Source: Octopus sinensis (taxonomy: Eukaryota). Taken from it: a DNA stretch of 64,000 nt. Positions 9,376 to 63,985 of the stretch are shown in pieces. The notes under the pieces are model-generated. The model was not told the DNA's origin. It saw only the letters and a list, made by a program, of their open reading frames with translations, and did no database searches. The stretch is from NCBI RefSeq assembly GCF_006345805.1, contig NC_043006.1:80476001-80540000 (forward strand), in the 5' to 3' direction. The position numbers and the translations under genes are program-made. The first letter of the stretch is position 1, and each line of letters begins with the position of its first letter.

Positions 9376-9409
9376 GTATATATATGTACATATGTATACA
9401 TGTATAGAT

Positions 9410-9466: not shown

Positions 9467-9467
<1 letters not shown>

Positions 9468-19270: not shown

Positions 19271-19350
<80 letters not shown>

Positions 19351-20291
19351 TTAGAAAGACATATACTTAGAAACTTATAAGCAGTGTAAATATACATGAG
19401 ATACATTCGAACTTTTAATCCATCCATGGTATTTTGTCATAGAGTAAATTTCCCATTGTAGACACATATAGGTGCAAGAGCACCACTTAAGTTCTCAGAG
19501 TCCCCTAACCAGGCTGATGGAATCATACATTTCGGAGTTGTTATTTCCGCCTCAGTGCCACATACTGGAAAGTAAAGTGCCACAAACTGACAAGCGAAAG
19601 GTATCTCTTGCTATATCTTATACATGAGAAACAGTGAACATTTCAATCCAACTTTACACGGATATTCCCAGATGCTGAGACGTATGTATAAGCTATTTTT
19701 CAAACGATATCACGTAGGACCTTAGATGAATTGTGAAATCAACTGAGAAGAATTATCAGGGAATATTTGTTTCGTGATAGAAGTTTCTGCAAAGAGTCGG
19801 TTAGCTGATTCTTTCTTTCCCTTCATCTGAATAATTCACACGGCCAATTATGATTTCTCAAAGACTACTTTTGATTTGTATGTATTATGGATTTTCTCTC
19901 TCCCTAGATCTAACGAGTGAAACATTGATGGAAGCGAGAATTAGCATGGTATTCTCATGTTTGGTATACTCATATTTGATGTCGTTTCGAATTCTTACGT
20001 TGATCGATATACTACTTCATTGCACAAACAGCAATCCAGAGGACGGTGGGATGGTTTGGGTGGAATTGTTTCATTTACCAATTGAATAATGAATGACGCC
20101 TCTAGGAGTTTGTTTGGGACTGCATTTCTTGATTCGGGAAGCAAAATTTTAGAGAGAAATAACATACTTTAATGTGATGAGAGTTGAAGAGTTTATATGT
20201 ATACCAAGTGGGTGGTAATTGGTGACTTATATGAGTTAGTTAAACACCTAACTTATATAGTGTAATAGGATGAAATCAATTAATTTCATAA

Positions 20292-22193
20292 TTAGGAATG
20301 CATTTTGTACCAACATTTGCAGCACGATTCTTTGAAATGGCGTCTAACGACTTTCGTTGTCAAGAATGTAATACTAATTATTAAACCGACATAAGCATTT
20401 CCAATTAAGCTGATATAGAAAACGTCGTGCACTTTGGCAATGGCACCTAATGGTATTATATACCATGTTAATCCCATTATAAGGCTAAATTTAAAATAAA
20501 TCATAATTCCTATATTCTTACGTACCCCAAGATATTTTGATGAGTTTTTCCTAGCTAAACAGAGACCCACGACTGTGACGATGAAAATCAAAGTATTCAT
20601 TGATAAAAGTGTTATCAGCGGAACTCCAACAAACCACTTCGGAATTTCATTTCTATCATACCAACAAAAATATCCGTCCGGATCTTCAGAAGAAATGGTC
20701 TGCGAATATATCAATGTTGCAATCACAAATATAAGTGGAGACATCCAAGCATATAAGGAATAAAAGATAAATCTCTTCCCTTGTTTTTCAACAATTGGAA
20801 ACTTTATAATTCCTGAAAATGTGTATAAAGCATCAAATGAAATAACATTCATCCAAAAAGCAGACGCTAACACGAAATAATGCAACAATGAGTCGCCTAT
20901 GTTGCACACCAAATGACGATCCGCAACAATGTCGAAGAAATATAGAACCTCTGTTGCAAGTATTGAGAATAAAAGTCCAATGGTTAGTTTACCTGGTAAT
21001 GTACGGAAATATACAGAAATAGACCGTAATAGTGATGATTAGAGCTACACTGGAGGACCATATTCCCGTAAATAGAAGGTACGTTTCAGGATCCATACCC
21101 ACGTTTGTCTTATAGTTATTTACACAAATACTAATACCTTGGGGATCTCGAATGAATTCTGACTGGTTTAGAAGCGTTCTGGAAGAATTCAGATAATATA
21201 TCCATCAAGAGTGAAAGAAAACTCAGACTCTTTTAATCTTTCGGTGGTACAATTTAAGATGAAACTAAAGTCAACTTGTCGGCATTCTATCTTCAGTTCG
21301 TCGTAAAGAAATCCAGCAGAACAATATGGCAATTCTTTCAAATATACTTTTTCATTATTTGCATTTAATAGTTCAACTGTGTTATGATTATAGTTAAATA
21401 TTGTTATTTGTCTATATTCCTTCTTTCCATGTGATATCTTTGAAGAGATCGTCACGTTGCACTCAATATTATTAATACCAATATCATTACAAAATGCGCA
21501 GTGTACGTTTCTAAAACTAGTCCCATTTGATCTGACAATAGCCATTGGTTCAAACATACAAGGAGAATCTAAAGATATATTGGTAAATTTTGTGGGACAA
21601 TTTGAAACATAATCAGTGCATGGATATTGGTAATTGCTAAAGTTCATTGGCGCTTCAATCGATACATTACAATGATTATTTCTCAATATGCGAGGGAAGT
21701 TTGATAAATCCATATCTATCTGATGATTGCATTTGTAGTGAACTGTCCATAATATATATTCTTCACCGTTGCACAGAGCACAGAACAAATTCCTGTAAAG
21801 TCTTTTAGTTCGTTTTCCCAGAGCAGGTATGTTGTATAATTGGTCATTTTCATTCAGTGTTTCACAATAGGTAAGGTGTTCTGTAATTGAGTGGTCGCTT
21901 GGGCAGTGATCAAATAGAAAATAACTTTCTAATTTATTATCACTAATTTTCCTGCAATTATAATCCACTGATGAGATTCCATGGTCACTTATTGTTTCAT
22001 TAATTACGTCTGAACAACATTCATTATATAGATTACAATATTTATGACAAGAACATCTTCTTTGCAAACTTTCTGTATCACAAAGTGAAGGATAACATTC
22101 AATATTTTTCACCGAACAATATGAAAGCCGGATAACATGGTTTCCAAAAGCTATCAGTAGAATGTGTAAGAGATTCCAGAAATGATGTTTCAT
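20292..22193 (-). pseudogene. GPCR paralogue A, copy 1: SMB-like/Cys-rich ectodomain plus Methuselah-like 7TM, disrupted by two frameshifts
   Basis: Aligns end to end with intact paralogue B. A 1-bp deletion near 21195-21200 creates TGA at 21189-21191. A 5-bp deletion near 21010 is seen as tgtata-tttc-cgtaca versus tgtata-ccagaactc-cgtaca in B. Confidence 0.88.
21189..22193 (-). CDS. Possible 334-aa secreted ectodomain-only product of paralogue A (expression unproven)
   Basis: ATG at 22193 followed by a signal-peptide-like MKHHFWNLLHILLIAFGNHVIRLSYC. It has CSCHKYCNLYNECCSD, YRNLFCALCN and FRNVHCAFCN, and stops before TM1. Confidence 0.4.
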   Translation of the reverse strand: MKHHFWNLLHILLIAFGNHVIRLSYCSVKNIECYPSLCDTESLQRRCSCHKYCNLYNECCSDVINETISDHGISSVDYNCRKISDNKLESYFLFDHCPSDHSITEHLTYCETLNENDQLYNIPALGKRTKRLYRNLFCALCNGEEYILWTVHYKCNHQIDMDLSNFPRILRNNHCNVSIEAPMNFSNYQYPCTDYVSNCPTKFTNISLDSPCMFEPMAIVRSNGTSFRNVHCAFCNDIGINNIECNVTISSKISHGKKEYRQITIFNYNHNTVELLNANNEKVYLKELPYCSAGFLYDELKIECRQVDFSFILNCTTERLKESEFSFTLDGYII

Positions 22194-25844: not shown

Positions 25845-25980
25845 GTTGAATATATTTTCAAATAATTTACACAACGAATTAACATTATATTTGATTTAAT
25901 GTCAGTCTATATTGAGACTATTTCTTCTTGAAATAGTAACAAGATATTCCATTGAATGAATCGTTTAATAACTGTTGCAT

Positions 25981-26000
25981 CTGTAAAAGATAAAAAAAAC
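25981..26000 (-). promoter_or_regulatory. Likely 3' splice acceptor of a 5'-UTR intron of paralogue B
   Basis: The minus strand reads gtttttttttatcttttacAG|atgcaac, 137 nt upstream of the ATG. Confidence 0.55.
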
Positions 26001-26742: not shown

Positions 26743-26815
<73 letters not shown>

Positions 26816-28559: not shown

Positions 28560-29720
28560 GTTCAATTCCAGTAATATATTGTTTAATCCGAATTTAGCAT
28601 AATTTTTTTTTTTAAGTTAATAAATTTCCAGATGTTGGGGTGATGAGACCCAACTTGAGTTTTGAATGCTCGGTGCTATTCTTCGATGAAGTTATGTGTT
28701 TTGGTGAAATCGTCTAGAACTCTTAAATAAATATTCCACATATTTAGTGGGAAGAGAAGTGTGCGTCACACATCCCTTCTTTTAGACCTTGCAATCCACG
28801 TATCCTCGAAATAATCAATGATTGTTTGCGCTTCATCCTAGAAGGTGTTGTTATCAAATAATAACTCATATGTTCTTTTTGCCCTACCTGCTGGGACAAA
28901 TGTTAATGCTGGTAACATCCTCATCACTAAAGCAAAATTAGGGTCTATTTCATATTTTCGTTTTAAACAATTACTTTGAATTACAGGAAAGATAGATTGG
29001 CTGAAGAGGAAAAAGCAAACGTTTTGTTCTGCACAAGGAAATTCTTTCAAAAATGCTTTCATCATCGCTTTCTCAAAAGCGATCGTTATTGACAATGGTG
29101 CACATGTTGGTTCAAGATTTTTTATCTCCTGCAAAAACGTTATATATGTTTCTTCTGTCTTGTCCGGCAATAACAAAAACACGAACGGCAGCAAAGCTTT
29201 CCCTTTTAATCCATGTAGGGTATATAACTGGTGAAACACTGTACATTAAGCCGCAAATATTACAATACGCTTTTCGACTGGTCCTGAGTCATAAAGTAGA
29301 AATTGAACACCTTTAAAAGATTTAGTAATTTCAGGTGGGAATAATATTTTACTGCAAGTTGGTGGTAAGGCCGGTCCAATAAGTGTTTGTTGCCTTATAG
29401 ATCTTATTGTTCTTTTACTACTTAGCATTTTTGGTAGTTTGCAGGCAACAACTTGATCGCAATCATCCAGAACAGTAGATAAGACTGAACGGGGCGCATG
29501 TTATGTTGATTTGGCCAGTTAAATTATCTTTGAAATGGCGTCTTTTGTTGCAATGTCAGCGGCGCCCGATATACGATTATGGTCGTTGGAAGACTTCACC
29601 ATTTCATCCTATACAGTAAATAATTACTGTAAAGGCATTATGTTGTTGGATATTTTTCGCACTTCCAATAAACATGTTCCCCATGTTCATAGTATGTCCA
29701 TTATCACCCAACTTGTAACG
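28560..29720 (-). mobile_element. Mutator-like (MULE) transposon with FLYWCH-like N-terminal remnant, decayed
   Basis: The minus strand gives YWKCEKY (FLYWCH-like), FHQLYTLHG..LLPFVFLLLPDKTEETY..FEKAMMKAFLKEFP..CFFLFSQSIF..LPALTFVP, and a C-terminal HRAFKTQVGSHHPNIWKFI. Confidence 0.88.
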
Positions 29721-32001: not shown

Positions 32002-32591
32002 GTTATGTGTTTTGGTGAAATCGTCTAGAACTCTTAAATAAATATTCCACATATTTAGTGGGAAGGAAGTGTGCGTCACACATCCCTTCTTTTAGACCTT
32101 GCAATCCACGTATCCTCGAAATAATCAATGATTGTTTGCGCTTCATCCTAGAAGGTGTTGTTATCAAATAATAACTCATATGCTCTTTTTGCCCTACCTG
32201 CTGGGACAAATGTTAATGCTGGTAACATCCTCATCACTAAAGCAAAATTAGGGTCTATTTCATATTTTCGTTTTAAACAATTACTTTGAATTACAGGAAA
32301 GATAGATTGGCTGAAGAGGAAAAAGCAAACGTTTTGTTCTGCACAAGGAAATTCTTTCAAAAATGCTTTCATCATCGCTTTCTCAAAAGCGATCGTTATT
32401 GACAATGGTGCACATGTTGGTTCAAGATTTTTTATCTCCTGCAAAAACGTTATATATGTTTCTTCTGTTTTGTCCGGCAATAACAAAAACACGAACGGCA
32501 GCAAAGCTTTCCATTTTAATCCATGTAGGGTATATAACTGGTGAAACACTGTACATTAAGCCGCAAATATCACAATACGCTTTTCGACTGG
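32002..32591 (-). mobile_element. Internal MULE transposase fragment inserted between 62-bp direct repeats (unit 2 only)
   Basis: Near-identical to 28691-29281. The flanks 31943-32004 and 32590-32651 are the same 62 bp. The insertion is absent from units 1 and 3. Confidence 0.92.
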
Positions 32592-32944
32592 AAGTTTTGG
32601 AGAAAACAATTGGGGGTTACATTTGAGAACTGTTCCCCACTCAGAAGTGTTTCGTAACATGTTGTCCATATTTGTTTCATTTTCTCCGTTTTTTGCGTTT
32701 GTGCATCCCTAGAGTTCTACTGAAGCAACAAACAGGCAATGAAGGCAGATGACGCCCTCCCCAGAAAACTCGTTATGCTAAAAATAACATCTAAAGGTCT
32801 GGTCCACAGAAATATGCTATTAAGATGAATTCTGTATCGCGTACGATTTCTTTTCACTTAAAATACATTCCCAGGCAAACATTTCTAATAGAAAGGCAGA
32901 AGACACTCGCAGCAAAAATAAGGAATATACACGCTTGACAGGAG

Positions 32945-33143
32945 TCAAACAAAGTAACTAATTTATCATCGTTAATTGTCCTGCAGTTATAATCTGTTGA
33001 TGATATTCCATGTTCAATTATAGTCTCGCTGATCACATCTGAACAACATTCATTATATAGATAACAATATTGATGACAAAAAAGTGTGCAAACTTTCTAC
33101 ATCGCTTTCAATTTTGTAATATATTCTGGAAATAATGTAGCAT
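32945..33143 (-). pseudogene. GPCR paralogue C, 5' fragment, copy 2
   Basis: Homologous to 2537-2742. The ORF track shows MISETIIEHGISSTDYNCRTINDDKL. Confidence 0.85.
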
Positions 33144-39797: not shown

Positions 39798-39871
<74 letters not shown>

Positions 39872-39942
39872 GTATATACCTATATATACATAAATATATA
39901 TATATATATATATGTATTAATATATACATACTTATATAAATG

Positions 39943-39983
<41 letters not shown>

Positions 39984-40028
39984 GTACATATGTATACATG
40001 TATAGATACACACACACACACACACACT

Positions 40029-40061
<33 letters not shown>

Positions 40062-40095
40062 GTATATATATGTACATATGTATACATGTATAGAT

Positions 40096-40151
<56 letters not shown>

Positions 40152-40185
40152 GTATATATATGTACATATGTATACATGTATAGAT

Positions 40186-40244
<59 letters not shown>
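39798..40244. repeat. Compound TA/CA microsatellite with an ~88-bp higher-order unit (3 copies)
   Basis: Units start at about 39972, 40060 and 40150. Confidence 0.85.
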
Positions 40245-40245
<1 letters not shown>

Positions 40246-41570
40246 TTCTCGTCCCAGCTCAGAGCTGCGGCCATGCTGACGCACCGCCGTTTTGTGCTAC
40301 ACTGTTATTGCGACGAACCTCGTCTAATATGTGGCACTTGGTGAAGAATGGAGTTTGATATAGCTACTCTCATTTGCACCTCTTGCCGTGAGGTAGGTTC
40401 ATCTGGGACTCTTGACAGGAAGATGTCCAGCTTTGATTTAAAAACCGCTACATCTACTTTGTGCAAGTTCCTCAGACTCTTTGGGGGAATATTAAAAAGC
40501 TGTGGGCCCGTGAAACCCAGGCTGTTGCAGGAGCTGCTCCTGAAGCGTGATGGCATTGCTGGGATCTTTGGCACTATGCAGTGTCGTCCCGTTCTAGCAT
40601 TGGTGTAGCTTACAATGCCAAAATTTGGCACAATTCCTTCCAGGATCTTCCAGACATATATTACTGCATACCTCTCCCGTCTTCTCTCCATGGAGTAGAG
40701 TCTTAGCTGTTTCAACCTTCCCCAGTAGCTGAGCTGTTGCAAAGAGACGATCTTCTTTGTGAATCTTCTCTGGATTGCTTCAAAGTCCGCTGTTAATTTT
40801 ACACTGGTGGGTGACCATAGCTGTGAGCAGTAATCCAGGCGACTGAGGACGAATGTCCGCCAGAGGACCATCATGGTTTCCTTATCTCTGGTTCTGAATG
40901 TTCTTAGGATCCACCTAGCCAGTCGTCTGCACTTTGTCGCCATCCTGGTAATGTGCACTTGGAAAGAGGTATCATCACTCATGTCGATACCCAGGTCCCT
41001 AACAGACTTAGGCTCTGCGATTGAAATTCCCTGTGGACCGGTGTATCCTGTAAGTTTAATATTCAGTTTTGGATGATGGTAGCGCAGGGCCTGGAATTTT
41101 TCAGCATTAAACTGCATATTATTATCCTCAGCCCATCTGTAGATTGAGTCCAACTCCTGCTGCAGGTGTGCAACATCGCTGGGGTTCTGTAGTTTCTGCG
41201 AGACTTTCGTATCGTCTGCATAGCTGACCAGAGTGGCTATCCGGCATTTGAGGGCATATCTGAGAGGGCCACTATAAAAAGCAGTGGTCCCAAGACAGTG
41301 CCCTGTGGAACACCGCTCACTATTTGTGTGTTCATAGAGGTGGCTCCATTAACCACTACTGCCTGACTCCTATCTTTCAGGAAGTCATGCAACTACACTC
41401 CAAGTTTTCCAGCTATGCCGAGGTCACGTAGTTTGTGGCATATCATACCATGATCCACCTTGTTAAAAGCTTTGCACAATCAAGTTAGATTATGTCCACA
41501 TTTGATTTGTTGAGTAACTGCTTCAACACCCAATCATAATAATGTAAGAGCTGGGTCAGGCAGCCCCTAC
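40245..41570 (-). mobile_element. CR1/L2-group LINE, unit 2 copy
   Basis: The 282-aa ORF 40305-41153 differs from the 9527 ORF at only a few residues. Confidence 0.9.
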
Positions 41571-49339: not shown

Positions 49340-49812
49340 AACTTAGATAAAACTTAGATATGTTTCGATCAGAGATTGGTCCAGGCCATGTCTAACTTAA
49401 TAGCACCACCTGATAGGATTATTCGAATCCTGTTTAAGTCAAGTTTTGTTCAAGTAGTGAGTTCTTGTTGGGTGAGTTGTATCCAGTTTTGTTCAAGTAG
49501 TGAGTTCTTGTTGGGTGAGTTGTATCCAATTATGGGTGGCTTGTCTGGTATTCTTTGAAGGAATCTATCCAGACTCTGTTTGAAGTTGATGGGATCCTTT
49601 TCCTCTTTGATCTCCCTCGGGACAATGTTAAATAGGGCAGGGCCTGTTGAGGAAAAGAAATTATGTTGCAGTGTACATGTATGTTGTGATCTTGAATTTG
49701 GCAGGGGACGTATAGCCCGTGGTCCAAGTCTCGGATGAACCTTGAAGCTAATGTTTAGGTCGTTTGGGCAAAGTTGGCGGTATATTTTCCACATCGTACA
49801 AATGATGTACCG

Positions 49813-49852: not shown

Positions 49853-50723
49853 CATATTTAGAAAGACATATACTTAGAAACTTATAAGCAGTGTAAATAT
49901 ACATGAGATACATTCGGACTTTTAATCCATCCATGGTATTTTGTCATAGAGTAAATTTCCCATTATAGACACATATAGGTGCAAGAGCACCACTTAAGTT
50001 CTCAGAGTCCCCTAACCAGGCTGATGGAATCATACATTTCGGAGTTGTTATTTCCGCCTCAGTGCCACATACTGGAAAGTAAAGTGCCACAAACTGACAA
50101 GCGAAAGGTATCTCTTGCTATATCTTATACATGAGAAACAGTGAACATTTCAATCCAACTTTACACGGATATTCCCAGATGCTGAGACGTATGTATAAGC
50201 TATTTTTCAAACGATATCACGTAGGACCTTAGATAAATTGTGAAATCAACTGAGAAGAATTATCAGGGAATATTTGTTTCGTGATAGAAGTTTCTGCAAA
50301 AGTCGGTTAGCTGATTCTTTCTTTCCCTTCATCTGAATAATTCACACGGCCAATTATGATTTCTCAAAGACTACTTTTGATTTGTATGTATTATGGATTT
50401 TCTCTCTCCCTAGATCTAACGAGTGAAACATTGATGGAAGCGACAATTAGCATGGTATTCTCATGTTTGGTATACTCATATTTGATGTCGTTTTGAATTC
50501 TTACGTTGATCGATATACTACTTCATTGCACAAACAGCAATCCAGAGGACGGTAGGATGGTTTGGGTGGAATTGTTTCATTTACCAATTGAATAATGAAT
50601 GACGCCTCTAGGAGTTTGTTTTGGACTATATTTTTTGATTCGGGAAGCAAAATTTTAGAGAGAAATAACATACTTTAATGTGATGAGAGTTGAAGAGTTT
50701 ATATGTATACCAAGTGGGTAGTA

Positions 50724-51442
50724 ATTTCCGTACATTACCAGGTAAACTAACCATTGGACTTTTATTCTCAATACTTGCAACAGAGGTTCTATATTTCTTC
50801 GACATTGTTGCGGATCGTCATTTGGTGTGCAACATAGGCGACTCATTGTTGCATTATTTCGTGTTAGCGTCTGCTTTTTGGATGAATGTTATTTCATTTG
50901 ATGCTTTATACACATTTTCAGGAATTATAAAGTTTCCAATTGTTGAAAAACAAGGGAAGAGATTTATCTTTTATTCCTTATATGCTTGGATGTCTCCACT
51001 TATATTTGTGATTGCAACATTGATATATTCGCAGACCATTTCTTCTGAAGATCCGGACGGATATTTTTGTTGGTATGATAGAAATGAAATTCCGAAGTGG
51101 TTTGTTGGAGTTCCGCTGATAACACTTTTATCAATGAATACTTTGATTTTCATCGTCACAGTCGTGGGTCTCTGTTTAGCTAGGAAAAACTCATCAAAAT
51201 ATCTTGGGGTACGTAAGAATATAGGAATTATGATTTATTTTAAATTTAGCCTTATAATGGGATTAACATGGTATATAATACCATTAGGTGCCATTGCCAA
51301 AGTGCACGACGTTTTCTATATCAGCTTAATTGGAAATGCTTATGTCGGTTTAATAATTAGTATTACATTCTTGACAACGAAAGTCGTTAGACGCCATTTC
51401 AAAGAATCGTGCTGCAAATGTTGGTACAAAATGCATTCCTAA
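50724..51442 (+). pseudogene. Inverted copy of the TM2-TM7 half of paralogue A
   Basis: Reads FRTLPGKL...KCWYKMHS*. The ORF-track start at 50690 is TTG just after an in-frame TGA. There is no signal peptide or TM1. Confidence 0.88.
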
Positions 51443-52291
51443 TTATGAAATTAATTGATTTCATCCTATTACACTATATAAGTTAGGTGTTTAACTAAAT
51501 CGTATAAGTATACGATTTAGTTAAACACCTAACTTATATAGTGTAATAGGATGAAATCAATTAATTTCATAATTAGGAATGCATTTTGTACCAACATTTG
51601 CAGCACGATTCTTTGAAATGGCGTCTAACGACTTTCGTTGTCAAGAATGTAATACTAATTATTAAACCGACATAAGCATTTCCAATTAAGCTGATATAGA
51701 AAACGTCGTGCACTTTGGCAATGGCACCTAATGGTATTATATACCATGTTAATCCCATTATAAGGCTAAATTTAAAATAAATCATAATTCCTATATTCTT
51801 ACGTACCCCAAGATATTTTGATGAGTTTTTCCTAGCTAAACAGAGACCCACGACTGTGACGATGAAAATCAAAGTATTCATTGATAAAAGTGTTATCAGC
51901 GGAACTCCAACAAACCACTTCGGAATTTCATTTCTATCATACCAACAAAAATATCCGTCCGGATCTTCAGAAGAAATGGTCTGCGAATATATCAATGTTG
52001 CAATCACAAATATAAGTGGAGACATCCAAGCATATAAGGAATAAAAGATAAATCTCTTCCCTTGTTTTTCAACAATTGGAAACTTTATAATTCCTGAAAA
52101 TGTGTATAAAGCATCAAATGAAATAACATTCATCCAAAAAGCAGACGCTAACACGAAATAATGCAACAATGAGTCGCCTATGTTGCACACCAAATGACGA
52201 TCCGCAACAATGTCGAAGAAATATAGAACCTCTGTTGCAAGTATTGAGAATAAAAGTCCAATGGTTAGTTTACCTGGTAATGTACGGAAAT
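50724..52291. repeat. Long palindrome: 783-bp arms (50724-51506 and 51509-52291) around a 2-nt loop (ag)
   Basis: The centre reads ...aactaaatcgtata-ag-tatacgatttagtt... The ORF ends 51442(+) and 51573(-) are symmetric about it and encode the same C-terminal 206 aa. The segments I checked are exact reverse complements. Confidence 0.95.
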
Positions 52292-53474
52292 ATACAGAAA
52301 TAGACCGTAATAGTGATGATTAGAGCTACACTGGAGGACCATATTCCCGTAAATAGAAGGTACGTTTCAGGATCCATACCCACGTTTGTCTTATAGTTAT
52401 TTACACAAATACTAATACCTTGGGGATCTCGAATGAATTCTGACTGGTTTAGAAGCGTTCTGGAAGAATTCAGATAATATATCCATCAAGAGTGAAAGAA
52501 AACTCAGACTCTTTTAATCTTTCGGTGGTACAATTTAAGATGAAACTAAAGTCAACTTGTCGGCATTCTATCTTCAGTTCGTCGTAAAGAAATCCAGCAG
52601 AACAATATGGCAATTCTTTCAAATATACTTTTTCATTATTTGCATTTAATAGTTCAACTGTGTTATGATTATAGTTAAATATTGCTATTTGTCTATATTC
52701 CTTCTTTCCATGTGATATCTTTGAAGAGATCGTCACGTTGCACTCAATATTATTAATACCAATATCATTACAAAATGCGCAGTGTACGTTTCTAAAACTA
52801 GTCCCATTTGATCTGACAGTAGCCATTGGTTCAAACATACAAGGAGAATCTAAAGATATATTGGTAAATTTTGTGGGACAACTTGAAACATAATCAGTGC
52901 ATGGATATTGGTAATTACTAAAGTTCAATGGCGCTTCAATCGATACATTACAATGATTATTTCTCAATATGCGAGGGAAGTTTGATAAATCCATATCTAT
53001 CTGATGATTGCATTTGTAGTGAACTGTCCATAATATATATTCTTCACCGTTGCACAGAGCACAGAACAAATTCCTGTAAAGTCTTTTAGTTCGTTTTCCC
53101 AGAGCAGGTATGTTGTATAATTGGTCATTTTCATTCAGTGTTTCACAATAGGTAAGGTGTTCTGTAATTGAGTGGTCGCTTGGGCAGTGATCAAAGAGAA
53201 AATAACTTTCTAATTTATTATCACTAATTTTCCTGCAATTATAATCCACTGATGAGATTCCATGGTCACTTATTGTTTCATTAATTACGTCTGAACAACA
53301 TTCATTATATAGATTACAATATTTATGACAAGAACATCTTCTTTGCAAACTTTCTGTATCACAAAGTGAAGGATAACATTCAATATTTTTCACCGAACAA
53401 TATGAAAGCCGGATAACATGGTTTCCAAATGCTATCAGTAGAATGTGTAAGAGATTCCAGAAATGATGTTTCAT
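51573..53474 (-). pseudogene. GPCR paralogue A, copy 2 (same two frameshifts as copy 1)
   Basis: ORFs 52470-53474 (334 aa) and 51573-52193, with the same lesions at ~52478 and ~52291. Confidence 0.88.
52470..53474 (-). CDS. Possible 334-aa secreted ectodomain-only product of paralogue A, copy 2
   Basis: Open ORF that differs from copy 1 at 4 residues (M/L, N/S, I/T, T/A). Confidence 0.4.
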   Translation of the reverse strand: MKHHFWNLLHILLIAFGNHVIRLSYCSVKNIECYPSLCDTESLQRRCSCHKYCNLYNECCSDVINETISDHGISSVDYNCRKISDNKLESYFLFDHCPSDHSITEHLTYCETLNENDQLYNIPALGKRTKRLYRNLFCALCNGEEYILWTVHYKCNHQIDMDLSNFPRILRNNHCNVSIEAPLNFSNYQYPCTDYVSSCPTKFTNISLDSPCMFEPMATVRSNGTSFRNVHCAFCNDIGINNIECNVTISSKISHGKKEYRQIAIFNYNHNTVELLNANNEKVYLKELPYCSAGFLYDELKIECRQVDFSFILNCTTERLKESEFSFTLDGYII

Positions 53475-53979
53475 GCTGAATATATATTTTATAGAGCTAC
53501 CTATAATTTAAAAGTATTTATGTCTCATTACATTTTCAGCATCCAAAATTTGATTTAGTTCATGGTATATTCAGACTATATTTCTATTAGCAAATATGGA
53601 CATATAATTAAGATTTACAAAATAATATGAGGATGATCCGTTGAATGAAATACGTCGCTACTGTTGACTCTGTTAAAAGAAAGAAAGAATACATTAAGAT
53701 TTTGTTTAACAAAAACTAGGTAATATATTAATGTTTAATTTTCAATATTTTCTAATAGATCCATTGTTTGCTTCAGAATATTTTTTAATATGCTACTTCT
53801 TTTAAGGCTCTTTCAATCTTTTATGCCTATATATCTGATAACCGAAACAATAGAATTTCAATGGTATTGTATAAAATTTTGGGGAATATATTTGTTTTTC
53901 CTACGTGAAATATTTTACTTCCATATTACCGTCGATGGGCGCTCATGATAGGTGGGCGGTTATCTAAGCCCCCAAATTT

Positions 53980-54700
53980 TTTGTAAAATAGAATTTTCCG
54001 TTTAACATCCCTGGGCGAATTTTCGGAAAATCATGAGTATTTGCACCCATCCAATCTATGAGTAACAAATCACAGTGTGGAAAATTTTGAATTGGCAGCA
54101 AATCGGTGCAGATTAAATAGGCGTCCACACGATCGATACCTGACATTTATTCCTAGAGGGCTAACATTAGCAAAAGCATGAGTAGAAGTGGCAGGAAAGA
54201 GTTGGGGCAAGGATGTCACCCTGCTTGACACTATTCTCTACAGGAATCGTTCCCGCCATGCCACTACCAACATTGGCCCAAGCCTCTATCCCATCATGAA
54301 ATGATTTAATTAAAGATACAAAGTGATACGGGCATCCAAGTTTGCCAAGTATTTTCCATAGTAATGCCCTATTTACAGTATCAGAGGTTTGGTTAAATCA
54401 AAGAATTCCTGGACAAGACCTATATTCTGCTAATAACATTTATCCTGCATCTGTCCATTGTTCCTTTACCAGATCAGAAACCCCAATGAGATTCAGATAT
54501 AACATTTGCGAGGCACCCATTCAAGGGGGTGAGAAGAATATTTGTCACAACCTTGCAGGCAGGTGATAGTAGAGCAATACCTCTGTAGTTACCTCACATT
54601 TTTCTGGTTCCTTTTCCTTTATAGAGAGGAAGAATAATTGCATACCTCCAATCCTTAGGCATTGCACCATCCCCACCAGACTACACTAATAGGTTCATGA
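53980..54700 (-). mobile_element. RTE (BovB-like) LINE fragment, unit 2 copy
   Basis: Same as 22700-23420 at offset 31281. Confidence 0.85.
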
Positions 54701-55220
54701 AGGGACTGTATTATGTAATCACAACAAAATCGTGAGTGGCAATCAAATGATTCAAGCAACCAAAAATAATTAATCTCTGAAGCTGTAACTACAGTTTACT
54801 TTTGGATATTCATTCTCGTTTGATGTACTCTGTAGAAACATTGAATGAAGCGGCAATTTTATAGTGTTTCCATTTAACTATGTACACTCATTTATGATGC
54901 TATTTTCAGTTCATGTGATTTTTGGGTATGTAACTGTAATAGTTAGGCATCACTCTTGAGGGTGAAAGCGGCGTATATTTTTCGTCTACAAATTGATTGA
55001 GGAATGATGTTTGCGGTGTTTGTGTTCGGGTATATTATTTCGTAGTGGGAACATTATTTTTAATGGAGAAACAACATAAGAACAATATAACTTTTGACTG
55101 TTGAGGTTTTTTATGGTATTCTGAGCGTGTAGTAACAGATCCGTTAGGTGTAGGAAAAACTTGACTATACTTGTGATTTGTGTGCGGTGAAATGATTAAA
55201 TCAAATTCATTTCATGAATA

Positions 55221-57125
55221 TTATTTTGCTTCGTGAAATAATTTGCAGCATGCTTGTTTGAAATGACGTCTAACGGCTTTCGTTGATAAAAATGTAATAC
55301 AAATTATTAAACCGACATAAGAATTTAATGTGACGCATATAGTGATTGCGTCATGCATATCGGCATAGCCAAATATTGGTATAAAAATCCAAGTGAAACC
55401 CATAATAAGGCTTAGTTTAAAATAAATCATAAATCCTGTTTTCTTACGTAGTCCAAGATATTTTGATGAGCTTTTTCTAGCTAAATAAAGACATATGGCG
55501 GTAATGAAAAACATCAGCGTATTAATTGATAAAATTGTTATTATGGGAAATGCAAAAAGCCACTTGAAAATCAAGTCCTTAAGATAACAAAGAATATATT
55601 CACGCGGGGTTTTAGGAGAAATGTTCAGCGAAAATAGCAGTGCCACTATCACAATTGCAAGTGGAGTTATCCAAGCATATAAAGAATAGAAGATAAACCT
55701 CTTCCCATGTTTTCCTGCAACTGGAAATTTTATAATTCCTGAGAACGTGTACAAGGCATCAAATGATATGACATTCATCCAGAGGACTGGTGTTAGTATT
55801 AAATAATGCAACAATGGCTGTAATACAAAACACGGTATTCGAATTTTTGTATACCTGAAGATGAAGAAAAGAAATTCGATTACAAACATGGACAACAACA
55901 GTCCCATGATTAGTTTACCTGGTAATGTACGGAGTTCTGGTATACAGAGATATACTGTAATAGTTATGAATATTGCTACAACGGAGGACAATAATCCGAT
56001 ATACATCAGAGAAAATAAAACCCCTATCTGCCCTCTTGTCTCATGATCATTTACACAGATACTTATGCCTTGAGGATCTCGACTGAACTCTGACTTGTTT
56101 AGCCATGTCTGGGAAGAATTCAGATAGAGAAACCCATCACTAGTAAAATGATATTCCGATTCCTCTAGTGTTCTGGTTGTACAATTTAACACGGAATTAA
56201 ATTCAACTTGTCGGCATTCATTCTTTAGTTCATCATAAACAAATCCATGCGAACAAGGGGACAGTTTTTTAATATAGTTTTTTTCAGTAGATGCATATAA
56301 TACTTCAACAGTGTTATTATTGTAATTAAATATTGTTTCGAAAGTATACACTTCGATTTCATATGTCATTTCTCTAGAGACAGTTATGTTACATTCAGTA
56401 TCATTAATATCAACACTGTTACAGATGGCGCAGTGAATATTTCTGAAATCAGTTCCATTTGATCTTACCATAGACATTGGTTCAAACATACAAGAAGACA
56501 CTAAAGATGCATTGGTAACCTTTAGGGGACAGTTTGAAACATAATCTGTACAGGGATATTGGTAATCTTTAAAGTTAAATGGAGCTTCAATCGATACATT
56601 ACAATGATTATTTCTCAACATTTGAGAGAAGAGTGATAAATCTATATTCATCCTATGTTTACATTTGTAGTGAACTGTCCATAATATGTATTCCTCTCCG
56701 TTACACAGAGCACAGAACAAATTCCTGTAAAGTCTTTTAGTTTTTTTTCCCAAAGCAGGTATGTTGTATAATCGGTCATTCTCGTCTGGTGTTTCACAGA
56801 AAGTAACGTGCTCTGTAACTGACTGGTCGTTTGGACAGCGGTCAAACAAAAAGTAACTGTCTGATTTATTATCGTTAATTTTTCTGCAGCTATAATCTGT
56901 TGACATTGTTCCATGTTCAATTATCGTTTCGCTGATCACGTCTGAACAGCATTCTTTATATAGATTACAATACTGATGACAAGAACATCTTTGATGCAAA
57001 CTTTCAGCATCACAAGTTGAAGGAGAACATTCGAGATTTTCTACCAAACAATATGACTGTTTAATGATTTCGTTCGCAAAAGCAATAAAGAAAATCTGAA
57101 AGAGATTCCGGAAGTGGTGTACCAT
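55221..57125 (-). CDS. GPCR paralogue B, copy 2: intact single-exon CDS, 634 aa
   Basis: Open frame with ATG at 57125. It differs from copy 1 at 10 residues (H/Q, L/I, R/T, VSFRN/FRYTK, S/P, Q/H). Confidence 0.9.
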   Translation of the reverse strand: MVHHFRNLFQIFFIAFANEIIKQSYCLVENLECSPSTCDAESLHQRCSCHQYCNLYKECCSDVISETIIEHGTMSTDYSCRKINDNKSDSYFLFDRCPNDQSVTEHVTFCETPDENDRLYNIPALGKKTKRLYRNLFCALCNGEEYILWTVHYKCKHRMNIDLSLFSQMLRNNHCNVSIEAPFNFKDYQYPCTDYVSNCPLKVTNASLVSSCMFEPMSMVRSNGTDFRNIHCAICNSVDINDTECNITVSREMTYEIEVYTFETIFNYNNNTVEVLYASTEKNYIKKLSPCSHGFVYDELKNECRQVEFNSVLNCTTRTLEESEYHFTSDGFLYLNSSQTWLNKSEFSRDPQGISICVNDHETRGQIGVLFSLMYIGLLSSVVAIFITITVYLCIPELRTLPGKLIMGLLLSMFVIEFLFFIFRYTKIRIPCFVLQPLLHYLILTPVLWMNVISFDALYTFSGIIKFPVAGKHGKRFIFYSLYAWITPLAIVIVALLFSLNISPKTPREYILCYLKDLIFKWLFAFPIITILSINTLMFFITAICLYLARKSSSKYLGLRKKTGFMIYFKLSLIMGFTWIFIPIFGYADMHDAITICVTLNSYVGLIICITFLSTKAVRRHFKQACCKLFHEAK

Positions 57126-57261
57126 GTTGAATATATTTTCAAATAATTTACACAACGAATTAACATTATATTTGATTTAATGTCAGTCTATATTGAGACT
57201 ATTTCTTCTTGAAATAGTAACAAGATATTCCATTGAATGAATCGTTTAATAACTGTTGCAT

Positions 57262-57281
57262 CTGTAAAAGATAAAAAAAAC
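57262..57281 (-). promoter_or_regulatory. Likely 3' splice acceptor upstream of paralogue B, copy 2
   Basis: Same polypyrimidine tract and AG as 25981-26000. Confidence 0.55.
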
Positions 57282-58023
57282 GAAAGCAACAAATAAACGA
57301 AGACCGTATTGAGATGATTTTACAAAGGAAGCAGTATAATAAGGAAGAAAACTTGATATCAACTAACATTATAACGGAATTTCGTAAATATACATACTAG
57401 GCAAGAACGCAAAAAACGTTTTATATATTTTAAACAAAATTCGTAAGGTAAAATTTGAAATTAAATAATTTCGTAATGGTACAAATGACGTAAGTAGTAA
57501 ATGTGGAAAACATTGGATGATTATGGTGACTTTAAATGGGATTTGTTTTTCGATTCTGTGGCTTCATCTCCGAGTTAGAATATTTGTTGTTTGTATTCTT
57601 TTGAATTCTCAGGCACGTCTCATATAAAATTACAGCGTAACGAGAGAAAACTCACCGTTACAAGTCCAGGACCCATATTTTTAAATTTCCAATGGATGTT
57701 CTCATATCATAACTAATAACGAGTTGAGAATTTGCAAAACAACTACACGTCAGTGAGAGTAGAATTTATAACCATAGATCCTTAAATATATATAAGAACG
57801 CTTGTCACAAAATTGTTCAATTCTGAAAACGACAGCCTCAGAAGGAGCAAGTTCTGGAATATAAGGGAAGTGCGACAGCAACAATAGCGATACCTTGGTC
57901 GTCGTTTCCACGTCGTTGGTAAGCAGCATACTCATTATTGTGCACCCTGTGAATACACTTTAAGCCCATTTTGAGTATGACGAGATCGTTACGAATAATA
58001 ATTCTGCACACACAGAGACACTA

Positions 58024-58309
<286 letters not shown>

Positions 58310-60049: not shown

Positions 60050-61203
60050 CCAGTAATATATTGTTTAATCCGAATTTAGCATAATTTTTTTTTTTTAAGT
60101 TAATAAATTTCCAGATGTTTGGGTGATGAGACCCAACTTGAGTTTTGAATGCTCGGTGCTATTCTTCGATGAAGTTATGTGTTTTGGTGAAATCGTCTAG
60201 AACTCTTAAATAAATATTCCACATATCTAGTGGGAAGAGAAGTGTGCGTCACACATCCCTTCTTTTAGACCTTGCAATCCACGTATCCTCGAAATAATCA
60301 ATGATTGTTTGCGCTTCATCCTAGAAGGTGTTGTCATCAAATAATAACTCATATGCTCTTTTTGCCCTACCTACTGGGACAAATGCTAATGCTGGTAACA
60401 TCCTCATCACTAAAGCAAAATTAGGGTCTATTTCATATTTTCGTTTTAAACAATTACTTTGAATTACAGGAAAGATAGATTGGTTGAAGAGGAAAAAGCA
60501 AACGTTTTGTTCTGCCCAAGGAAATTCTTTCAAAAATGCTTTCATCATCGCTTTCTCAAAAGCGATCGTTATTGACAATGGTGCACATGTTGGTTCAAGA
60601 TTTTTTATCTCCTGCAAAAACGTTATATATGTTTCTTCTGTTTTGTCCGGCAATAACAAAAACACGAACGGCAGCAAAGCTTTCCCTTTTAAACCATGTA
60701 GGGTATATAACTGGTGAAAAACTGTACATTAAGACGCAAATATCACAATACGCTTTTCGACTGGTCCTGAGTCATAAAGTAGAAATTGAACACCTTTAAA
60801 AGATTTAGTAATTTCAGGTGGGAATAATATTTTACTGCAAGTTGGTGGTAAGGCCGGTCCAATAAGGTTTTGTTGCCTTATAGATCTTATTGTTCTTTTA
60901 CTACTTAGCATTTTTGGTAGTTTGCAGGCAACAACTTGATCGCAATCATCCAGAACAGTAGATAAGACTGGACGGGGCGCATGTTATGTTGATTTGGCCA
61001 GTTAAATTATCTTTGAAATGGCGTCTTTTGTTGCAATGTCAGCGGCGCCCGATATACGATTATGGTCGTTGGAAGACTTCACCATTTCATCCTATACAGT
61101 AAATAATTACTGTAAAGGCATTATGTTGTTGGATATTTTTCGCACTTCCAATAAACATGTTCCCCATGTTCATAGTATGTCCATTATCACCCAACTTGTA
61201 ACG
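60050..61203 (-). mobile_element. MULE transposon remnant, unit 2/3 junction copy
   Basis: ORF 60321-60677 (LPFVFLLLPDKTEETY...) matches 28838-29239. Confidence 0.88.
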
Positions 61204-62752: not shown

Positions 62753-63784
62753 ATGCCTACATATACATACATATATCTAGTAATATCTAAAATATATTGT
62801 GCGCGTATTCGCTTCTCGCGCGGAACCGGATTCAACAATTGCTTTCATACTTGTGATGCATGAATAATTCGACCTCGGTCAAATGATCGGCTGTTCATGC
62901 GACTTTTTTTTATTAGAAATTATTAAAAAAACTATTGCTTTGAAAGATTTTTAAATGTTTACTTCCGGTTTTCTAGCGTTTGTGACGTAACATATCTCTT
63001 TATGTATCTCTCTCTATCCATTTGTTTCTAATTATTTCTAACTCTCTATAGCATATTTCTCTATTTATATCTCTTGTTTTCACTTTCATATTTTAGACGA
63101 TATTTACAATTTCAATTTTCATACGACACTGTTTAACTTCCATGTTATTGTTTTCACTGTAGGTCTAAGTTTTCAAGTACAATTTCCCGCCGCCACGCCA
63201 ATTTGATTGATCATAACTTTCAGAAAAAAGGATATTTTGCAATAAACATTTCTACAAATATGTGTGATGTCATACAGATTTCGAAAATATAAAATTTTGT
63301 GGGTAGGAGTTTTAGGAGGGAGTAGGGGTTTTCTGAAAGTTCCACTTCAATTCGTTTAAACTTTCAAGAAAATTAATATTATTTAATGAAAGTCTCTACA
63401 AATTTATCTCGGACTATGTAGAAGACATAGGAATTTTTGGAGAAAACAATTGGGGGTTACATTTGAGAACTGTTCCCCACTCAGAAGTGTTTCGTAACAT
63501 GTTGTCTATATTTGTTTCATTTTCTCCGTTTTTTGCGTTTGTGCATCCCTAGAGTTCTACTGAAGCAACAAACAGGCAATGAAGGCAGATGAAGCCCTCC
63601 CCAGAAAACTCGTTATGCTAAAAATAACATCTAAAGGTCTGGTCCACAGAAATATGCTATTAAGATGAATTCTCTATCGCGTACGATTTCTTTTCACTTA
63701 AAATACATTCCCAGGCAAACATTTCTAATAGAAAGGCAGAGGACACTCGCAGCAAAAATAAGGAATATACACGCTTGACAGGAG

Positions 63785-63985
63785 TCAAACAAAGTAACTA
63801 ATTTATCATCGTTAATTGTCCTGCAGCTATAATTTGTTGATGATGTTCCATGTTCAATTATAGTCTCGCTGATCACATCTGAACAACATTCATTATATAG
63901 ACAACAATATTGATGACAAAAACATGTGTGCAAACTTTCTATATCGCTTTCAATTTTGTAATATATTCTGGAAATAATGTAACAT
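63785..63985 (-). pseudogene. GPCR paralogue C, 5' fragment, copy 3
   Basis: The ORF track shows CFCHQYCCLYNECCSDVISETIIEHGTSSTNYSCRTINDDKL; ATG at 63985. Confidence 0.85.

What the first reader, a model, noticed from the sequence alone, without database searches (positions are those of the whole stretch)
50724..52291. 783-bp-arm palindrome made from a GPCR pseudogene: candidate hairpin-RNA locus inside the receptor cluster
Seen: in unit 2 only, the TM2-TM7 half of paralogue A plus its proximal 3' flank is duplicated in inverted orientation around a 2-nt loop. Unit 1 has only ggtgact at the equivalent spot (20221-20227). A minus-strand transcript of A meets no AATAAA/ATTAAA between its stop codon and the loop, so it would run into the inverted arm. 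It could fold into dsRNA at least ~150 bp long (first ATTAAA-type site near 51350) and up to ~780 bp. Established: long hairpin RNAs feed Dicer/endo-siRNA pathways and are ADAR substrates, coleoid cephalopods edit RNA heavily, and nearly spacer-less long palindromes are normally unstable. Inference: this may be a recently born silencing or editing element for the A copies. It could act less completely on B, whose TM3-TM4 sequence is similar but not identical.
Basis: partly seen in the sequence, partly recalled or inferred. Interest (0 to 1): 0.85.

Follow-up and report, generated by a model that had tools for sequence, protein, structure and literature searches.

The report
Young palindrome in octopus receptor pseudogene
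One copy of a broken octopus receptor gene has had its last 786 bases copied backwards right next to itself, giving a perfect 783-base-arm palindrome; this looks like a very recent DNA-repair or replication accident (or, less likely, a sequencing-library artefact), and nothing shows it is an evolved gene-silencing element.

Summary
Arms 50724-51506 and 51509-52291 are 783 nt, with 0 mismatches and a 2-nt spacer. Only unit 2 of a ~30-kb tandem array carries it. Unit 1 and the Octopus sinensis locus have the empty site.

The arm is TM2-TM7, the stop codon and 64 nt of 3' flank of Methuselah-like class-B GPCR paralogue A. A is frameshifted across TM1 in both units but intact in O. sinensis.

The junctions show a two-breakpoint event: 3-nt microhomology (ATT) at the outer end, 1 nt at the centre, and GGTG lost. 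This is the signature of fold-back priming or template switching. A whole-read long-read foldback artefact has only one junction, so it does not fit simply.

Read-through would therefore give a perfect stem of at least ~150-177 bp.

The functional reading is untested and weakened:
- The parent is a pseudogene.
- Intact paralogue B shares only two exact runs of 20 nt or more with the arm.
- Molluscs are reported to lack Dicer-2, siRNA-class Argonaute and detectable endo-siRNAs.
- ADAR hyper-editing is the likelier fate of any transcript.

No reads, RNA or independent assembly could be reached. Verdict: a real but ordinary young structural variant, about 0.6; a library or assembly artefact, about 0.25.

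The parts
50724..51506 (+). Left arm: the inverted copy. It carries the sense sequence of the 3' half of gene A (TM2-TM7, stop, 64-nt flank) on the + strand. An accidental 250-aa ORF (50690-51442) runs in from the flank.
   Evidence: 0/783 mismatches to the right arm; ORF; 7tm_2, E 6.5e-13. It carries the unit-2 variants, not the unit-1 variants, at the two sites that differ, so it was copied from unit 2 itself.
51507..51508 (.). 2-nt spacer (AG) at the centre. With T 51509 it reads AGT, the reverse complement of the ancestral ACT (unit 1 20225-20227). The centre junction has 1 nt of microhomology (T 51509).
51509..52291 (-). Right arm: the native 3' half of pseudogene A in unit 2 (64-nt 3' flank 51509-51572, stop 51573-51575, coding TM7 back to TM2). 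It is collinear with unit 1 20228-21010 and with O. sinensis.
50724..50726 (.). [quoted passage not shown]
   Evidence: flank, arm and unit-1 sequences side by side
50720..50720 (.). Unit-2-specific G>A substitution 4 nt outside the outer junction (unit 1 and O. sinensis have G).
51573..53474 (-). Paralogue A of unit 2: a Methuselah-like class-B GPCR pseudogene. The 334-aa ectodomain ORF is 52470-53474. The TM1 segment is out of frame with stops. TM2-TM7 is back in frame at 51573-52289.
52282..52487 (-). Out-of-frame TM1 segment of A, bounded by a 1-nt deletion (motif 52466-52487) and a complex 5-nt deletion (motif 52282-52299). The second coincides with the outer end of the right arm (52291).
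20221..20227 (.). Empty site in unit 1 (GGTGACT). It is collinear with O. sinensis L001 (...AAGTCGCCAATTACC...), so it is the ancestral state.
20292..22193 (-). Paralogue A of unit 1, with the same frameshifts. Its 3' half (20236-21010) is identical to both arms of unit 2.
55221..57155 (-). Paralogue B of unit 2: an intact single-exon ORF (634 aa from the first ATG), 7tm_2. It lies upstream of A on the same strand and is about 76% identical to A in DNA.
   Evidence: 93% to O. sinensis 'Mth-like 12'
51349..51354 (-). First poly(A)-type hexamer (ATTAAA) that a minus-strand read-through transcript of A would meet, about 153 nt into the inverted arm.
50674..50679 (-). The ATTAAA that lies 119 nt after A's stop in unit 1 (20168-20173). 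In unit 2 the insertion displaces it to 894 nt after the stop.

Best explanation
This is a very young fold-back inverted duplication, a mutational accident rather than an evolved element.

How it formed (inferred from the junctions): in unit 2 of a tandem array of Methuselah-like GPCR genes, a break or a stalled fork arose 64-71 nt downstream of the stop codon of pseudogene A. A 3' end then primed on its own or the complementary strand with 1 nt of homology and copied 786 nt backwards through TM7 to TM2. It rejoined the other side through a 3-nt microhomology (ATT), and GGTG was lost. The result is a perfect 783-bp-arm palindrome with a 2-nt spacer.

What follows (inferred, none of it shown): the arms have no differences, so the event is younger than the last homogenisation of units 1 and 2. 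It may be private to the sequenced animal or to one haplotype. If A of unit 2 is still transcribed, or is reached by read-through from B, the transcript would run past the loop. The nearest poly(A) hexamer of the ancestral arrangement has been pushed 785 nt away. The transcript would then form a perfect hairpin of about 150-780 bp. In an octopus the expected fate of such RNA is ADAR hyper-editing, not siRNA production. At the DNA level the main expected effect is local fragility, through cruciform or hairpin formation.
For: Structure: a perfect palindrome, present in unit 2 only.

Polarity: unit 1 and O. sinensis (L001, CM016868.1) run collinearly through the site. The empty site is therefore ancestral and the left arm is the insertion.

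Copy made in cis: both arms carry the unit-2/ancestral bases at the two positions where unit 1 differs.

Two junctions with 3-nt and 1-nt microhomology and a 4-nt loss. This is the architecture described for local fold-back inverted insertions at yeast breaks: one end extended by fold-back synthesis, the other captured by end joining (PMC11724301). It also fits the fold-back model of human inverted duplications, which uses 2-8 bp microhomology (PMC3907307).

Youth: there are 0/783 differences between arms, whereas units 1 and 2 differ at 0.55% over the adjoining 6.6 kb. About 4 differences would be expected, so P(0) is about 1.4%.

No selected function is apparent. A is frameshifted in both units. 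Its 7TM half has dN/dS 1.09 against O. sinensis. B shares only two exact runs of 20 nt or more with the arm. Rfam finds nothing. Molluscs are reported to lack the endo-siRNA machinery.

Near-perfect, short-spacer inverted repeats also occur in O. vulgaris loci of the same gene cluster (221-nt arms, 98%, 9-nt spacer; 311-nt arms, 99.7%). Such structures are therefore not unique in these assemblies.
Against: No reads could be examined, so the presence of the palindrome in the animal's DNA is not shown.

Long perfect palindromes with almost no spacer are known to be unstable in eukaryotes (own knowledge: yeast, mouse transgenes, human PATRRs). That lowers the prior for finding one in a germline assembly.

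Known yeast fold-back insertions are 5-34 bp, and human fold-back duplications have spacers of at least 766 bp. A 786-nt copy with a 2-nt loop falls outside both ranges.

Polymerases used in library preparation can make the same two-junction structure in a single molecule.

The outer breakpoint coincides with a pre-existing complex indel in A. A simple one-step accident does not explain this.

The comparator palindromes come from an ONT-based assembly and could share an artefactual origin.
Confidence: 0.6

Rival explanations
1. It is a library or assembly artefact. One DNA molecule acquired the inverted copy in vitro, by strand-displacement synthesis with template switching during nick or end repair or during amplification. 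Alternatively an assembler kept a chimeric read as the backbone of the contig. On this view the animal's genome has the unit-1-like empty site.
For: The arms are exactly identical with an almost spacer-less centre, as expected of a copy made moments before sequencing.

Foldback artefacts make up about 0.55-0.6% of ONT genomic reads and are thought to arise in library preparation (PMC12870357).

The closest public assembly of this species group, O. vulgaris GCA_951406725, is ONT R9.4.1 plus NextDenovo plus Hypo (PMC10700109). It is not known whether the window comes from it.

The locus sits in a 97-99.5% identical tandem array, where read placement and consensus are weakest.

No independent assembly or transcript of the locus exists in the collections searched.
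Against: The classical foldback read is symmetric about the read's midpoint and has one junction. Here the inverted segment stops after 786 nt. It rejoins the correct flank 4 nt from where it left, with microhomology, and the contig continues collinearly for tens of kb on both sides.

A consensus from normal coverage should out-vote a 785-nt insertion carried by one read.

HiFi data show virtually no foldbacks.
Confidence: 0.25
2. It is a functional, newly born hairpin-RNA locus. Read-through transcription of A in unit 2 makes long dsRNA. Either it is diced into small RNAs that silence the A copies and, partially, B, or it acts through ADAR, for example as an editing substrate or sponge that modulates receptor transcripts.
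For: The geometry is right. There is no poly(A) hexamer before the loop, the ancestral hexamer is displaced, and the stem is perfect (177 bp to the first ATTAAA, -293.5 kcal/mol; 782 bp and -1387 kcal/mol at full length).

The arm is 100% identical to A of unit 1 over 775 nt.

hpRNA loci born by inverted duplication of their targets are established in Drosophila (PMC10317233; cited there and in PMC11114477: Czech 2008, Tam 2008).

ADAR targets dsRNA from young inverted repeats across metazoans, and octopus edits far more than other animals (PMC9989829).
Against: The targets with perfect complementarity are pseudogenes.

B offers only a 24-nt and a 20-nt perfect match.

Molluscs lack DICER2 and siAGO, and no endo-siRNA signature was found in surveys that included octopus material.

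There is no evidence that A is transcribed. Its intact O. sinensis orthologue is not among the annotated proteins found.

Zero divergence between arms means there has been no time for selection to act. The element is absent from unit 1 and from O. sinensis.
Confidence: 0.06
3. It is an older palindrome kept perfect by arm-to-arm gene conversion, and it has exchanged sequence with other units of the array. The ATT at the outer junction and the complex indel in native A would then have a common origin, spread to unit 1 by inter-unit conversion.
For: The outer breakpoint lies inside the complex indel that A carries in both units. The three bases created by that indel are the junction microhomology. 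By rough estimate the coincidence has a chance of about 0.7%.

The segment to the right of the centre (20228-26807 vs 51509-58089) is the most similar long block between the units, at 99.45% against 97.4-98.5% elsewhere. It begins exactly at the palindrome centre.

Large palindromes elsewhere, such as those of the primate Y chromosome (own knowledge), keep their arms about 99.97% identical by conversion.
Against: Unit 1 keeps the ancestral GGTGACT, which unit 2 has lost, so unit 1 never carried this palindrome.

O. sinensis lacks the palindrome.

A spacer of 2 nt should not survive long.

Other 500-nt bins between the units also have 0 mismatches, so the identity pattern is not exceptional.
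Confidence: 0.08

Closest known systems
Local fold-back (snap-back) inverted insertions at DNA breaks, and microhomology-mediated template switching (yeast, PMC11724301; MMBIR/FoSTeS-type events, own knowledge)
   Same: An inverted copy of the sequence immediately next to the break. One junction is at the fold-back point with minimal homology and a tiny loop. The second junction is formed by microhomology end capture. A few bases are lost at the site.
   Different: Length: 786 nt here against mostly 5-34 bp in yeast. The organism and the enzymes involved are unknown. No experimental break is known here.
Human constitutional fold-back inverted duplications (PMC3907307)
   Same: An inverted duplication formed by intrastrand pairing at short inverted microhomology (2-8 bp there; 1-3 nt here).
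   Different: The human events are Mb-scale and terminal. They carry 766 bp-70 kb single-copy spacers and pass through a dicentric chromosome. This one is interstitial, 0.8 kb, has a 2-nt spacer, and both flanks are retained.
Drosophila hpRNA loci, mouse-oocyte pseudogene inverted repeats, and plant proto-MIRNA genes born from inverted duplication of their targets
   Same: An inverted duplication of (pseudo)gene sequence which, if transcribed through, gives a long perfect hairpin complementary to paralogues.
   Different: No transcript or small RNA is shown. The host phylum is reported to lack Dicer-2, siAGO and endo-siRNAs. The perfectly matched targets are pseudogenes. The arms have had no time to be shaped by selection.
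Palindromic AT-rich repeats (PATRR11/22) and engineered long palindromes: fragile, cruciform-forming DNA (own knowledge)
   Same: Near-perfect palindrome of several hundred bp, AT-rich (the arm is 33% G+C), with an almost spacer-less centre.
   Different: It is derived from coding sequence, not from AT-rich repeats. No evidence of breakage or translocation at the site.
Foldback artefact reads of long-read sequencing (PMC12870357)
   Same: A perfect reverse-complement join with no or very little sequence between the halves.
   Different: Artefact reads fold at the read's midpoint and have a single junction. Here there is a second junction back to the collinear flank after 786 nt.

Membership tests
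Fold-back / template-switch inverted duplication (structural variant class) | Inverted copy lies adjacent to its source, and the ancestral empty site is identifiable | tested here: met
   Unit 1 and O. sinensis are collinear across the site. The insertion is the reverse complement of the adjoining 786 nt.
Fold-back / template-switch inverted duplication (structural variant class) | Breakpoint junctions show microhomology and/or small deletions or insertions rather than long homology | tested here: met
   ATT (3 nt) at the outer junction, T (1 nt) at the centre, GGTG lost. No repeats or transposon ends at the junctions.
Fold-back / template-switch inverted duplication (structural variant class) | Present in the organism's DNA: single molecules span both junctions | not testable with these tools
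   No reads were available. No independent assembly of the locus was found.
hpRNA / endo-siRNA hairpin locus | Inverted repeat able to fold into a long, near-perfect intramolecular duplex | tested here: met
   782 bp, -1387 kcal/mol for the full arms. 177-bp stem if cleaved after the first ATTAAA.
hpRNA / endo-siRNA hairpin locus | One transcript spans both arms | not testable with these tools
   Only indirect evidence: no AATAAA/ATTAAA between A's stop and the loop. Hexamers are common in this 66% A+T DNA, and no RNA data could be reached.
hpRNA / endo-siRNA hairpin locus | Arm-derived ~21-nt duplex small RNAs made by a siRNA-class Dicer and loaded in a siRNA-class Argonaute | not testable with these tools
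   No small-RNA data. The literature reports DICER2 and siAGO absent in Mollusca and no endo-siRNA signature (PMC11114477; PMC12479628).
hpRNA / endo-siRNA hairpin locus | Functional target gene(s) with extended complementarity | tested here: inconclusive
   Perfect complementarity exists only to the A pseudogene copies. Intact B shares just 24-nt and 20-nt exact runs with the arm.
Long-read foldback artefact | Single reverse-complement junction with the two halves symmetric, and no return to the original strand | tested here: not met
   There is a second junction 786 nt away that returns to the collinear flank. The contig continues on both sides. Criterion taken from PMC12870357.
Methuselah-like class-B (secretin-family) GPCR (the parent gene) | 7tm_2 seven-helix domain above the Pfam threshold | tested here: met
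   B: PF00002, E 7.6e-11, 42.2 bits (cut-off 20.6). Arm ORF: E 6.5e-13, 49 bits. The closest named proteins are 'G-protein coupled receptor Mth-like' of O. sinensis, O. vulgaris and O. bimaculoides.
Methuselah-like class-B (secretin-family) GPCR (the parent gene) | Complete open reading frame through all seven helices (for paralogue A) | tested here: not met
   The TM1 segment of A is out of frame with 5 stops in both units.

The most novel reading that the evidence does not exclude
The palindrome is real, is transcribed through, and is a hairpin-RNA locus caught at birth in a cephalopod. It would be a perfect 0.15-0.78-kb dsRNA made from a receptor pseudogene. It would be processed either by octopus ADARs (massive hyper-editing, possibly titrating editing activity or marking paralogous receptor transcripts) or by the single mollusc Dicer into siRNA-like RNAs. 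The second outcome would contradict the reported absence of endo-siRNAs in molluscs.
Probability: 0.06. Interest if true: 0.75.

Novelty: new member of a known kind. Interest (0 to 1): 0.3.

Why it matters
If the palindrome is real, it is a clean natural example of a two-junction fold-back inverted duplication caught with zero divergence, with its empty site preserved both in the neighbouring repeat unit and in a sister species. That makes it useful for three things:
- studying how long, spacer-less palindromes arise and how long they survive in an animal germline;
- serving as a marker of instability in a tandemly expanding octopus GPCR cluster;
- providing a ready-made endogenous long dsRNA for asking what an octopus does with such RNA, given its heavy ADAR editing and no known siRNA pathway.

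If it is an artefact, it is a useful warning. Two-junction inverted insertions can survive into polished long-read assemblies inside tandem arrays.

In neither case is there evidence of a regulatory function.

Tried and rejected
1. Independent evidence for the junctions. Exact-product look-ups found nothing on record for the junction-spanning 250-aa ORF, the 206-aa arm ORF, the 334-aa A ectodomain ORF or B. Homology searches with the arm ORF and the A ectodomain found no near-identical protein, only P0001 (74%, metaclust), P0002 and P0003. No other assembly or transcriptome of this locus could therefore be reached. Two metagenome scans, one with the 3' end of A and one with the palindrome centre, gave 0 hits.

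2. Identifying the source assembly. O. vulgaris loci L002-L004 (OX597822.1, 28.27-28.89 Mb) hold paralogous cluster members. Only the last ~970 nt of L002 match the window, at 96%. O. sinensis L001 matches at 92-96%. The species is an Octopus of the vulgaris/sinensis group. The exact assembly, and hence the sequencing platform, remains unknown.

3. Transposon origin: rejected. The arms are gene A sequence and have no terminal repeats or target-site duplication.

4. Unit 1 having lost a palindrome: rejected. Unit 1 keeps the ancestral GGTGACT, as in O. sinensis.

5. The two unit-1/unit-2 differences beside the centre being mutations made by the event: rejected. O. sinensis agrees with unit 2, so they are unit-1-derived.

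6. Known RNA families: none in the whole window at gathering thresholds.

7. A truncated receptor protein from the left-arm ORF: rejected as implausible. It has a TTG start by the bacterial code only, no TM1 and no signal or ectodomain.
Full report
**Observation.** The palindrome is there exactly as described. Arms 50724-51506 and 51509-52291 are 783 nt and perfectly complementary, with 2 nt (AG) between them. The window contains no N.

The window is a head-to-tail array of ~30-31-kb units. Unit 1 runs to about 30 kb, unit 2 to about 61.25 kb, and unit 3 begins there. The units are 97-99.5% identical. Each unit carries two single-exon genes on the minus strand:
- B: 23940-25874 and 55221-57155, an intact 644-codon frame (634 aa from the first ATG).
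- A: 20292-22193 and 51573-53474.
Each unit also holds a short third ectodomain fragment.

Both genes are class-B receptors (Pfam 7tm_2). Their nearest named relatives are the 'G-protein coupled receptor Mth-like' proteins of Octopus sinensis, O. vulgaris and O. bimaculoides. B is 93% identical to O. sinensis 'Mth-like 12'. The DNA is 92-96% identical to O. sinensis chromosome CM016868.1 (L001). About 970 nt are 96% identical to O. vulgaris OX597822.1 near 28.32 Mb. The source is therefore an octopus of the vulgaris/sinensis group. I could not establish which assembly.

**What the arms are.** The right arm is native. It is collinear with unit 1 (20228-21010) and continues into the rest of gene A. 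It comprises 64 nt of 3' flank, the stop codon, and the coding sequence back to FRTLPGKL, the loop after TM1. That is TM2-TM7.

The left arm is the inverted copy. Unit 1 has only GGTGACT at the site (20221-20227).

The O. sinensis locus runs collinearly through the site, like unit 1: L001 14083-16472 matches unit 1 22452-20085. Its alignment to unit 2 stops at 51509, and the left arm matches in reverse. The empty site is therefore ancestral, and the palindrome is a derived insertion in unit 2.

The copy was made from unit 2 itself. At the two positions where unit 1 differs from the arm (20232, 20235), both arms carry the unit-2 bases. O. sinensis shows these are the ancestral bases.

**A is a pseudogene here.** Against O. 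sinensis A, which is an uninterrupted 646-codon frame (L001 14313-16253), and against B, the window's A has two lesions about 190 nt apart. One is a 1-nt deletion. The other is a complex 5-nt deletion (TGTATACCAGAACTCCGTAC to TGTATATTTCCGTAC). The stretch between them encodes TM1 and is read out of frame with five stops. Both units share both lesions. These are not homopolymer slips. The 7TM half of A has dN/dS 1.09 against O. sinensis.

**Junction anatomy and mechanism.**
- Outer junction: the flank ends ...GGGTAGTAATT and the copy begins ATTTCCGTAC..., so ATT is shared (50724-50726).
- Centre: the copy runs through AGT, the reverse complement of ancestral ACT. The native sequence resumes at T 51509, so 1 nt is shared.
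- Only GGTG was lost, and the copied tract is 786 nt.

Two breakpoints, microhomology at each, a few lost bases, and an inverted copy that ends where it started. This is what fold-back priming at a resected break gives, with end-joining capture of the other end. The same architecture is documented in yeast for 5-34-bp copies (PMC11724301). An intra-fork template switch would give it too. The fold-back model of human inverted duplications also uses 2-8 bp microhomology, but it leaves spacers of 766 bp or more (PMC3907307). Which of these routes applied is inference.

A G>A change specific to unit 2 lies 4 nt outside the outer junction (50720). It fits error-prone synthesis but is not significant alone.

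**Age.** The arms differ at 0 of 783 positions. Units 1 and 2 differ at 0.55% over the next 6.6 kb, so about 4 differences would be expected (P of about 1.4%). The event is therefore younger than the last homogenisation of the units, unless arm-to-arm conversion keeps the arms identical.

**Real or artefact?** I could not test this. No reads are available. Neither the exact-protein index nor the homology searches found another assembly or transcript of this locus. Two metagenome scans were empty.

Internal evidence argues against the simplest artefact. Foldback reads make up about 0.55-0.6% of ONT genomic reads and virtually none in HiFi. They fold about the read's midpoint and have a single junction (PMC12870357). 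Here there is a second, microhomology-bearing junction back to the correct flank after 786 nt, and the contig is collinear with unit 1 for kilobases on both sides.

A polymerase template switch during library repair could still make such a molecule, and consensus is weakest in near-identical tandem units. The nearest public assembly of this species group is ONT-based (PMC10700109).

Near-perfect inverted repeats with short spacers also occur in O. vulgaris loci of the same cluster: 221-nt arms at 98% with a 9-nt spacer, and 311-nt arms at 99.7%. Their slight divergence suggests that at least some such structures are real and persist. I put 'real DNA rearrangement' at about 0.6-0.7 and 'artefact' at about 0.25.

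**The hairpin-RNA idea.** On the minus strand no AATAAA/ATTAAA lies between A's stop and the loop. The first ATTAAA of unit 1 is 119 nt after the stop (20173). In unit 2 that same hexamer is 894 nt away (50679). The first hexamers met are inside the inverted arm: ATTAAA at 51354, then AATAAA at 51239, 50975 and 50766. A read-through transcript would fold into a perfect stem of about 177 bp (-293.5 kcal/mol) and up to 782 bp (-1387 kcal/mol). Such hexamers are frequent in 66% A+T DNA, and the unit-1 hexamer is not conserved in O. sinensis, so these predictions are soft.

Four things weigh against an evolved silencing element.
1. The only perfectly complementary targets are the A pseudogene copies. 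The arm equals unit-1 A over 775 nt. Intact B shares just a 24-nt and a 20-nt exact run with it, at the TM2 start and in TM7, not in TM3-TM4.
2. Molluscs are reported to lack DICER2 and siRNA-class Argonautes. The gene survey behind this report included cephalopods. No endo-siRNA signature has been found in them. The authors suggest editing as the way long dsRNA is handled (PMC11114477; PMC12479628).
3. Nothing shows that A is transcribed. Its intact O. sinensis orthologue is not among the annotated proteins retrieved.
4. With zero divergence there has been no time for selection.

ADAR editing of dsRNA formed by young inverted repeats is general in animals and extreme in octopus (PMC9989829). 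If a transcript exists, hyper-editing is its most likely fate.

**Comparison with known systems.** As DNA, this belongs to fold-back or template-switch inverted duplications. It is unusual in its combination of length (786 nt) and a 2-nt loop. As a potential RNA locus it resembles three known cases: Drosophila hpRNA loci (PMC10317233), mouse-oocyte pseudogene inverted repeats, and plant proto-miRNA genes. Only the 'foldable inverted duplicate of a gene' criterion is met. Transcript, small RNAs and a functional target are untested or doubtful. It also resembles palindromic fragile sites such as the human PATRRs (own knowledge).

**Unexplained.** The outer end of the arm (52291) falls inside the complex 5-nt indel that A carries in both units. 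The ATT created by that indel is the junction microhomology. By a rough estimate the coincidence has a chance of about 0.7%. Possible readings are chance, a local stalling-prone spot, or sequence exchange between the junction and the native copy followed by inter-unit conversion. The most similar long block between the units does start exactly at the palindrome centre.

**Verdict.** A regulatory role is unsupported, and for the siRNA branch it is unlikely. Reality in the animal needs the raw reads. Interest is modest (0.3). This is a new member of a known kind.

Noticed in passing
window 52282-52299 (and 21001-21018 in unit 1): The outer breakpoint of the palindrome arm coincides, to within 2 nt, with the complex 5-nt indel that helps break gene A. 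The ATT created by the indel is the junction microhomology. Unit 1 has the indel but no palindrome.
   Followed up: partly
L001 9786-11686 and 14313-16253 vs window 55221-57155 and 51573-53474: Reciprocal damage. In O. sinensis, A is an intact 646-codon ORF, but B has a 4-nt deletion near its N-terminus, so the annotated protein P0003 starts downstream. In the window B is intact and A is frameshifted. The O. sinensis lesion could be an assembly error.
   Followed up: partly
window 51576-52289 and 55224-56000 vs L001: Against O. sinensis, the 7TM halves have dN/dS 1.09 (A) and 1.67 (B). The ectodomain halves have 0.34 and 0.28. The membrane half of these receptors is evolving without visible constraint, or orthology is blurred by conversion among array units.
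   Followed up: no
L003 6664-7114; L002 43812-44576 and 43018-43702: Other near-perfect inverted repeats with short spacers in O. vulgaris loci of the same GPCR cluster: 221-nt arms at 98% with a 9-nt spacer, and 311-nt arms at 99.7% with a 143-nt spacer. They are single-locus within the DNA held. They could be older events of the same kind, foldback elements or ONT assembly artefacts.
   Followed up: partly
window 2541-2702, 32935-33078, 63775-63945: A short fragment (50-60 aa, 72-78% identical to residues 49-108 of B) of a third receptor ectodomain, once per repeat unit on the minus strand.
   Followed up: no
window 9527-10375 / 40305-41153 and 18905-19348 / 49450-49794: ORFs that look like C-terminal tails of non-LTR retrotransposon ORF2 (no Pfam hit), once each per unit. 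The second lies about 0.9 kb from the palindrome's left flank. O. sinensis loses collinearity with the window about 140 nt beyond the insertion site.
   Followed up: partly
window 50720: A G>A substitution specific to unit 2, 4 nt outside the outer junction (unit 1 and O. sinensis have G). It is compatible with error-prone synthesis at the breakpoint, but a single site is not significant.
   Followed up: partly
window 9110-9467, 39800-40245, 58027-58302: Long, imperfect (AT)n/(TA)n arrays (140-220 copies). These are themselves self-complementary and account for most other inverted-repeat hits in the window.
   Followed up: no
window 28691-29281, 32002-32591, 60174-60764: A 591-nt segment occurs twice, 3.3 kb apart, around the unit 1/unit 2 boundary (99% identical), but only once (60174-60764) in the covered part of the unit 2/unit 3 boundary region. 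The units therefore differ by a local duplication there.
   Followed up: no
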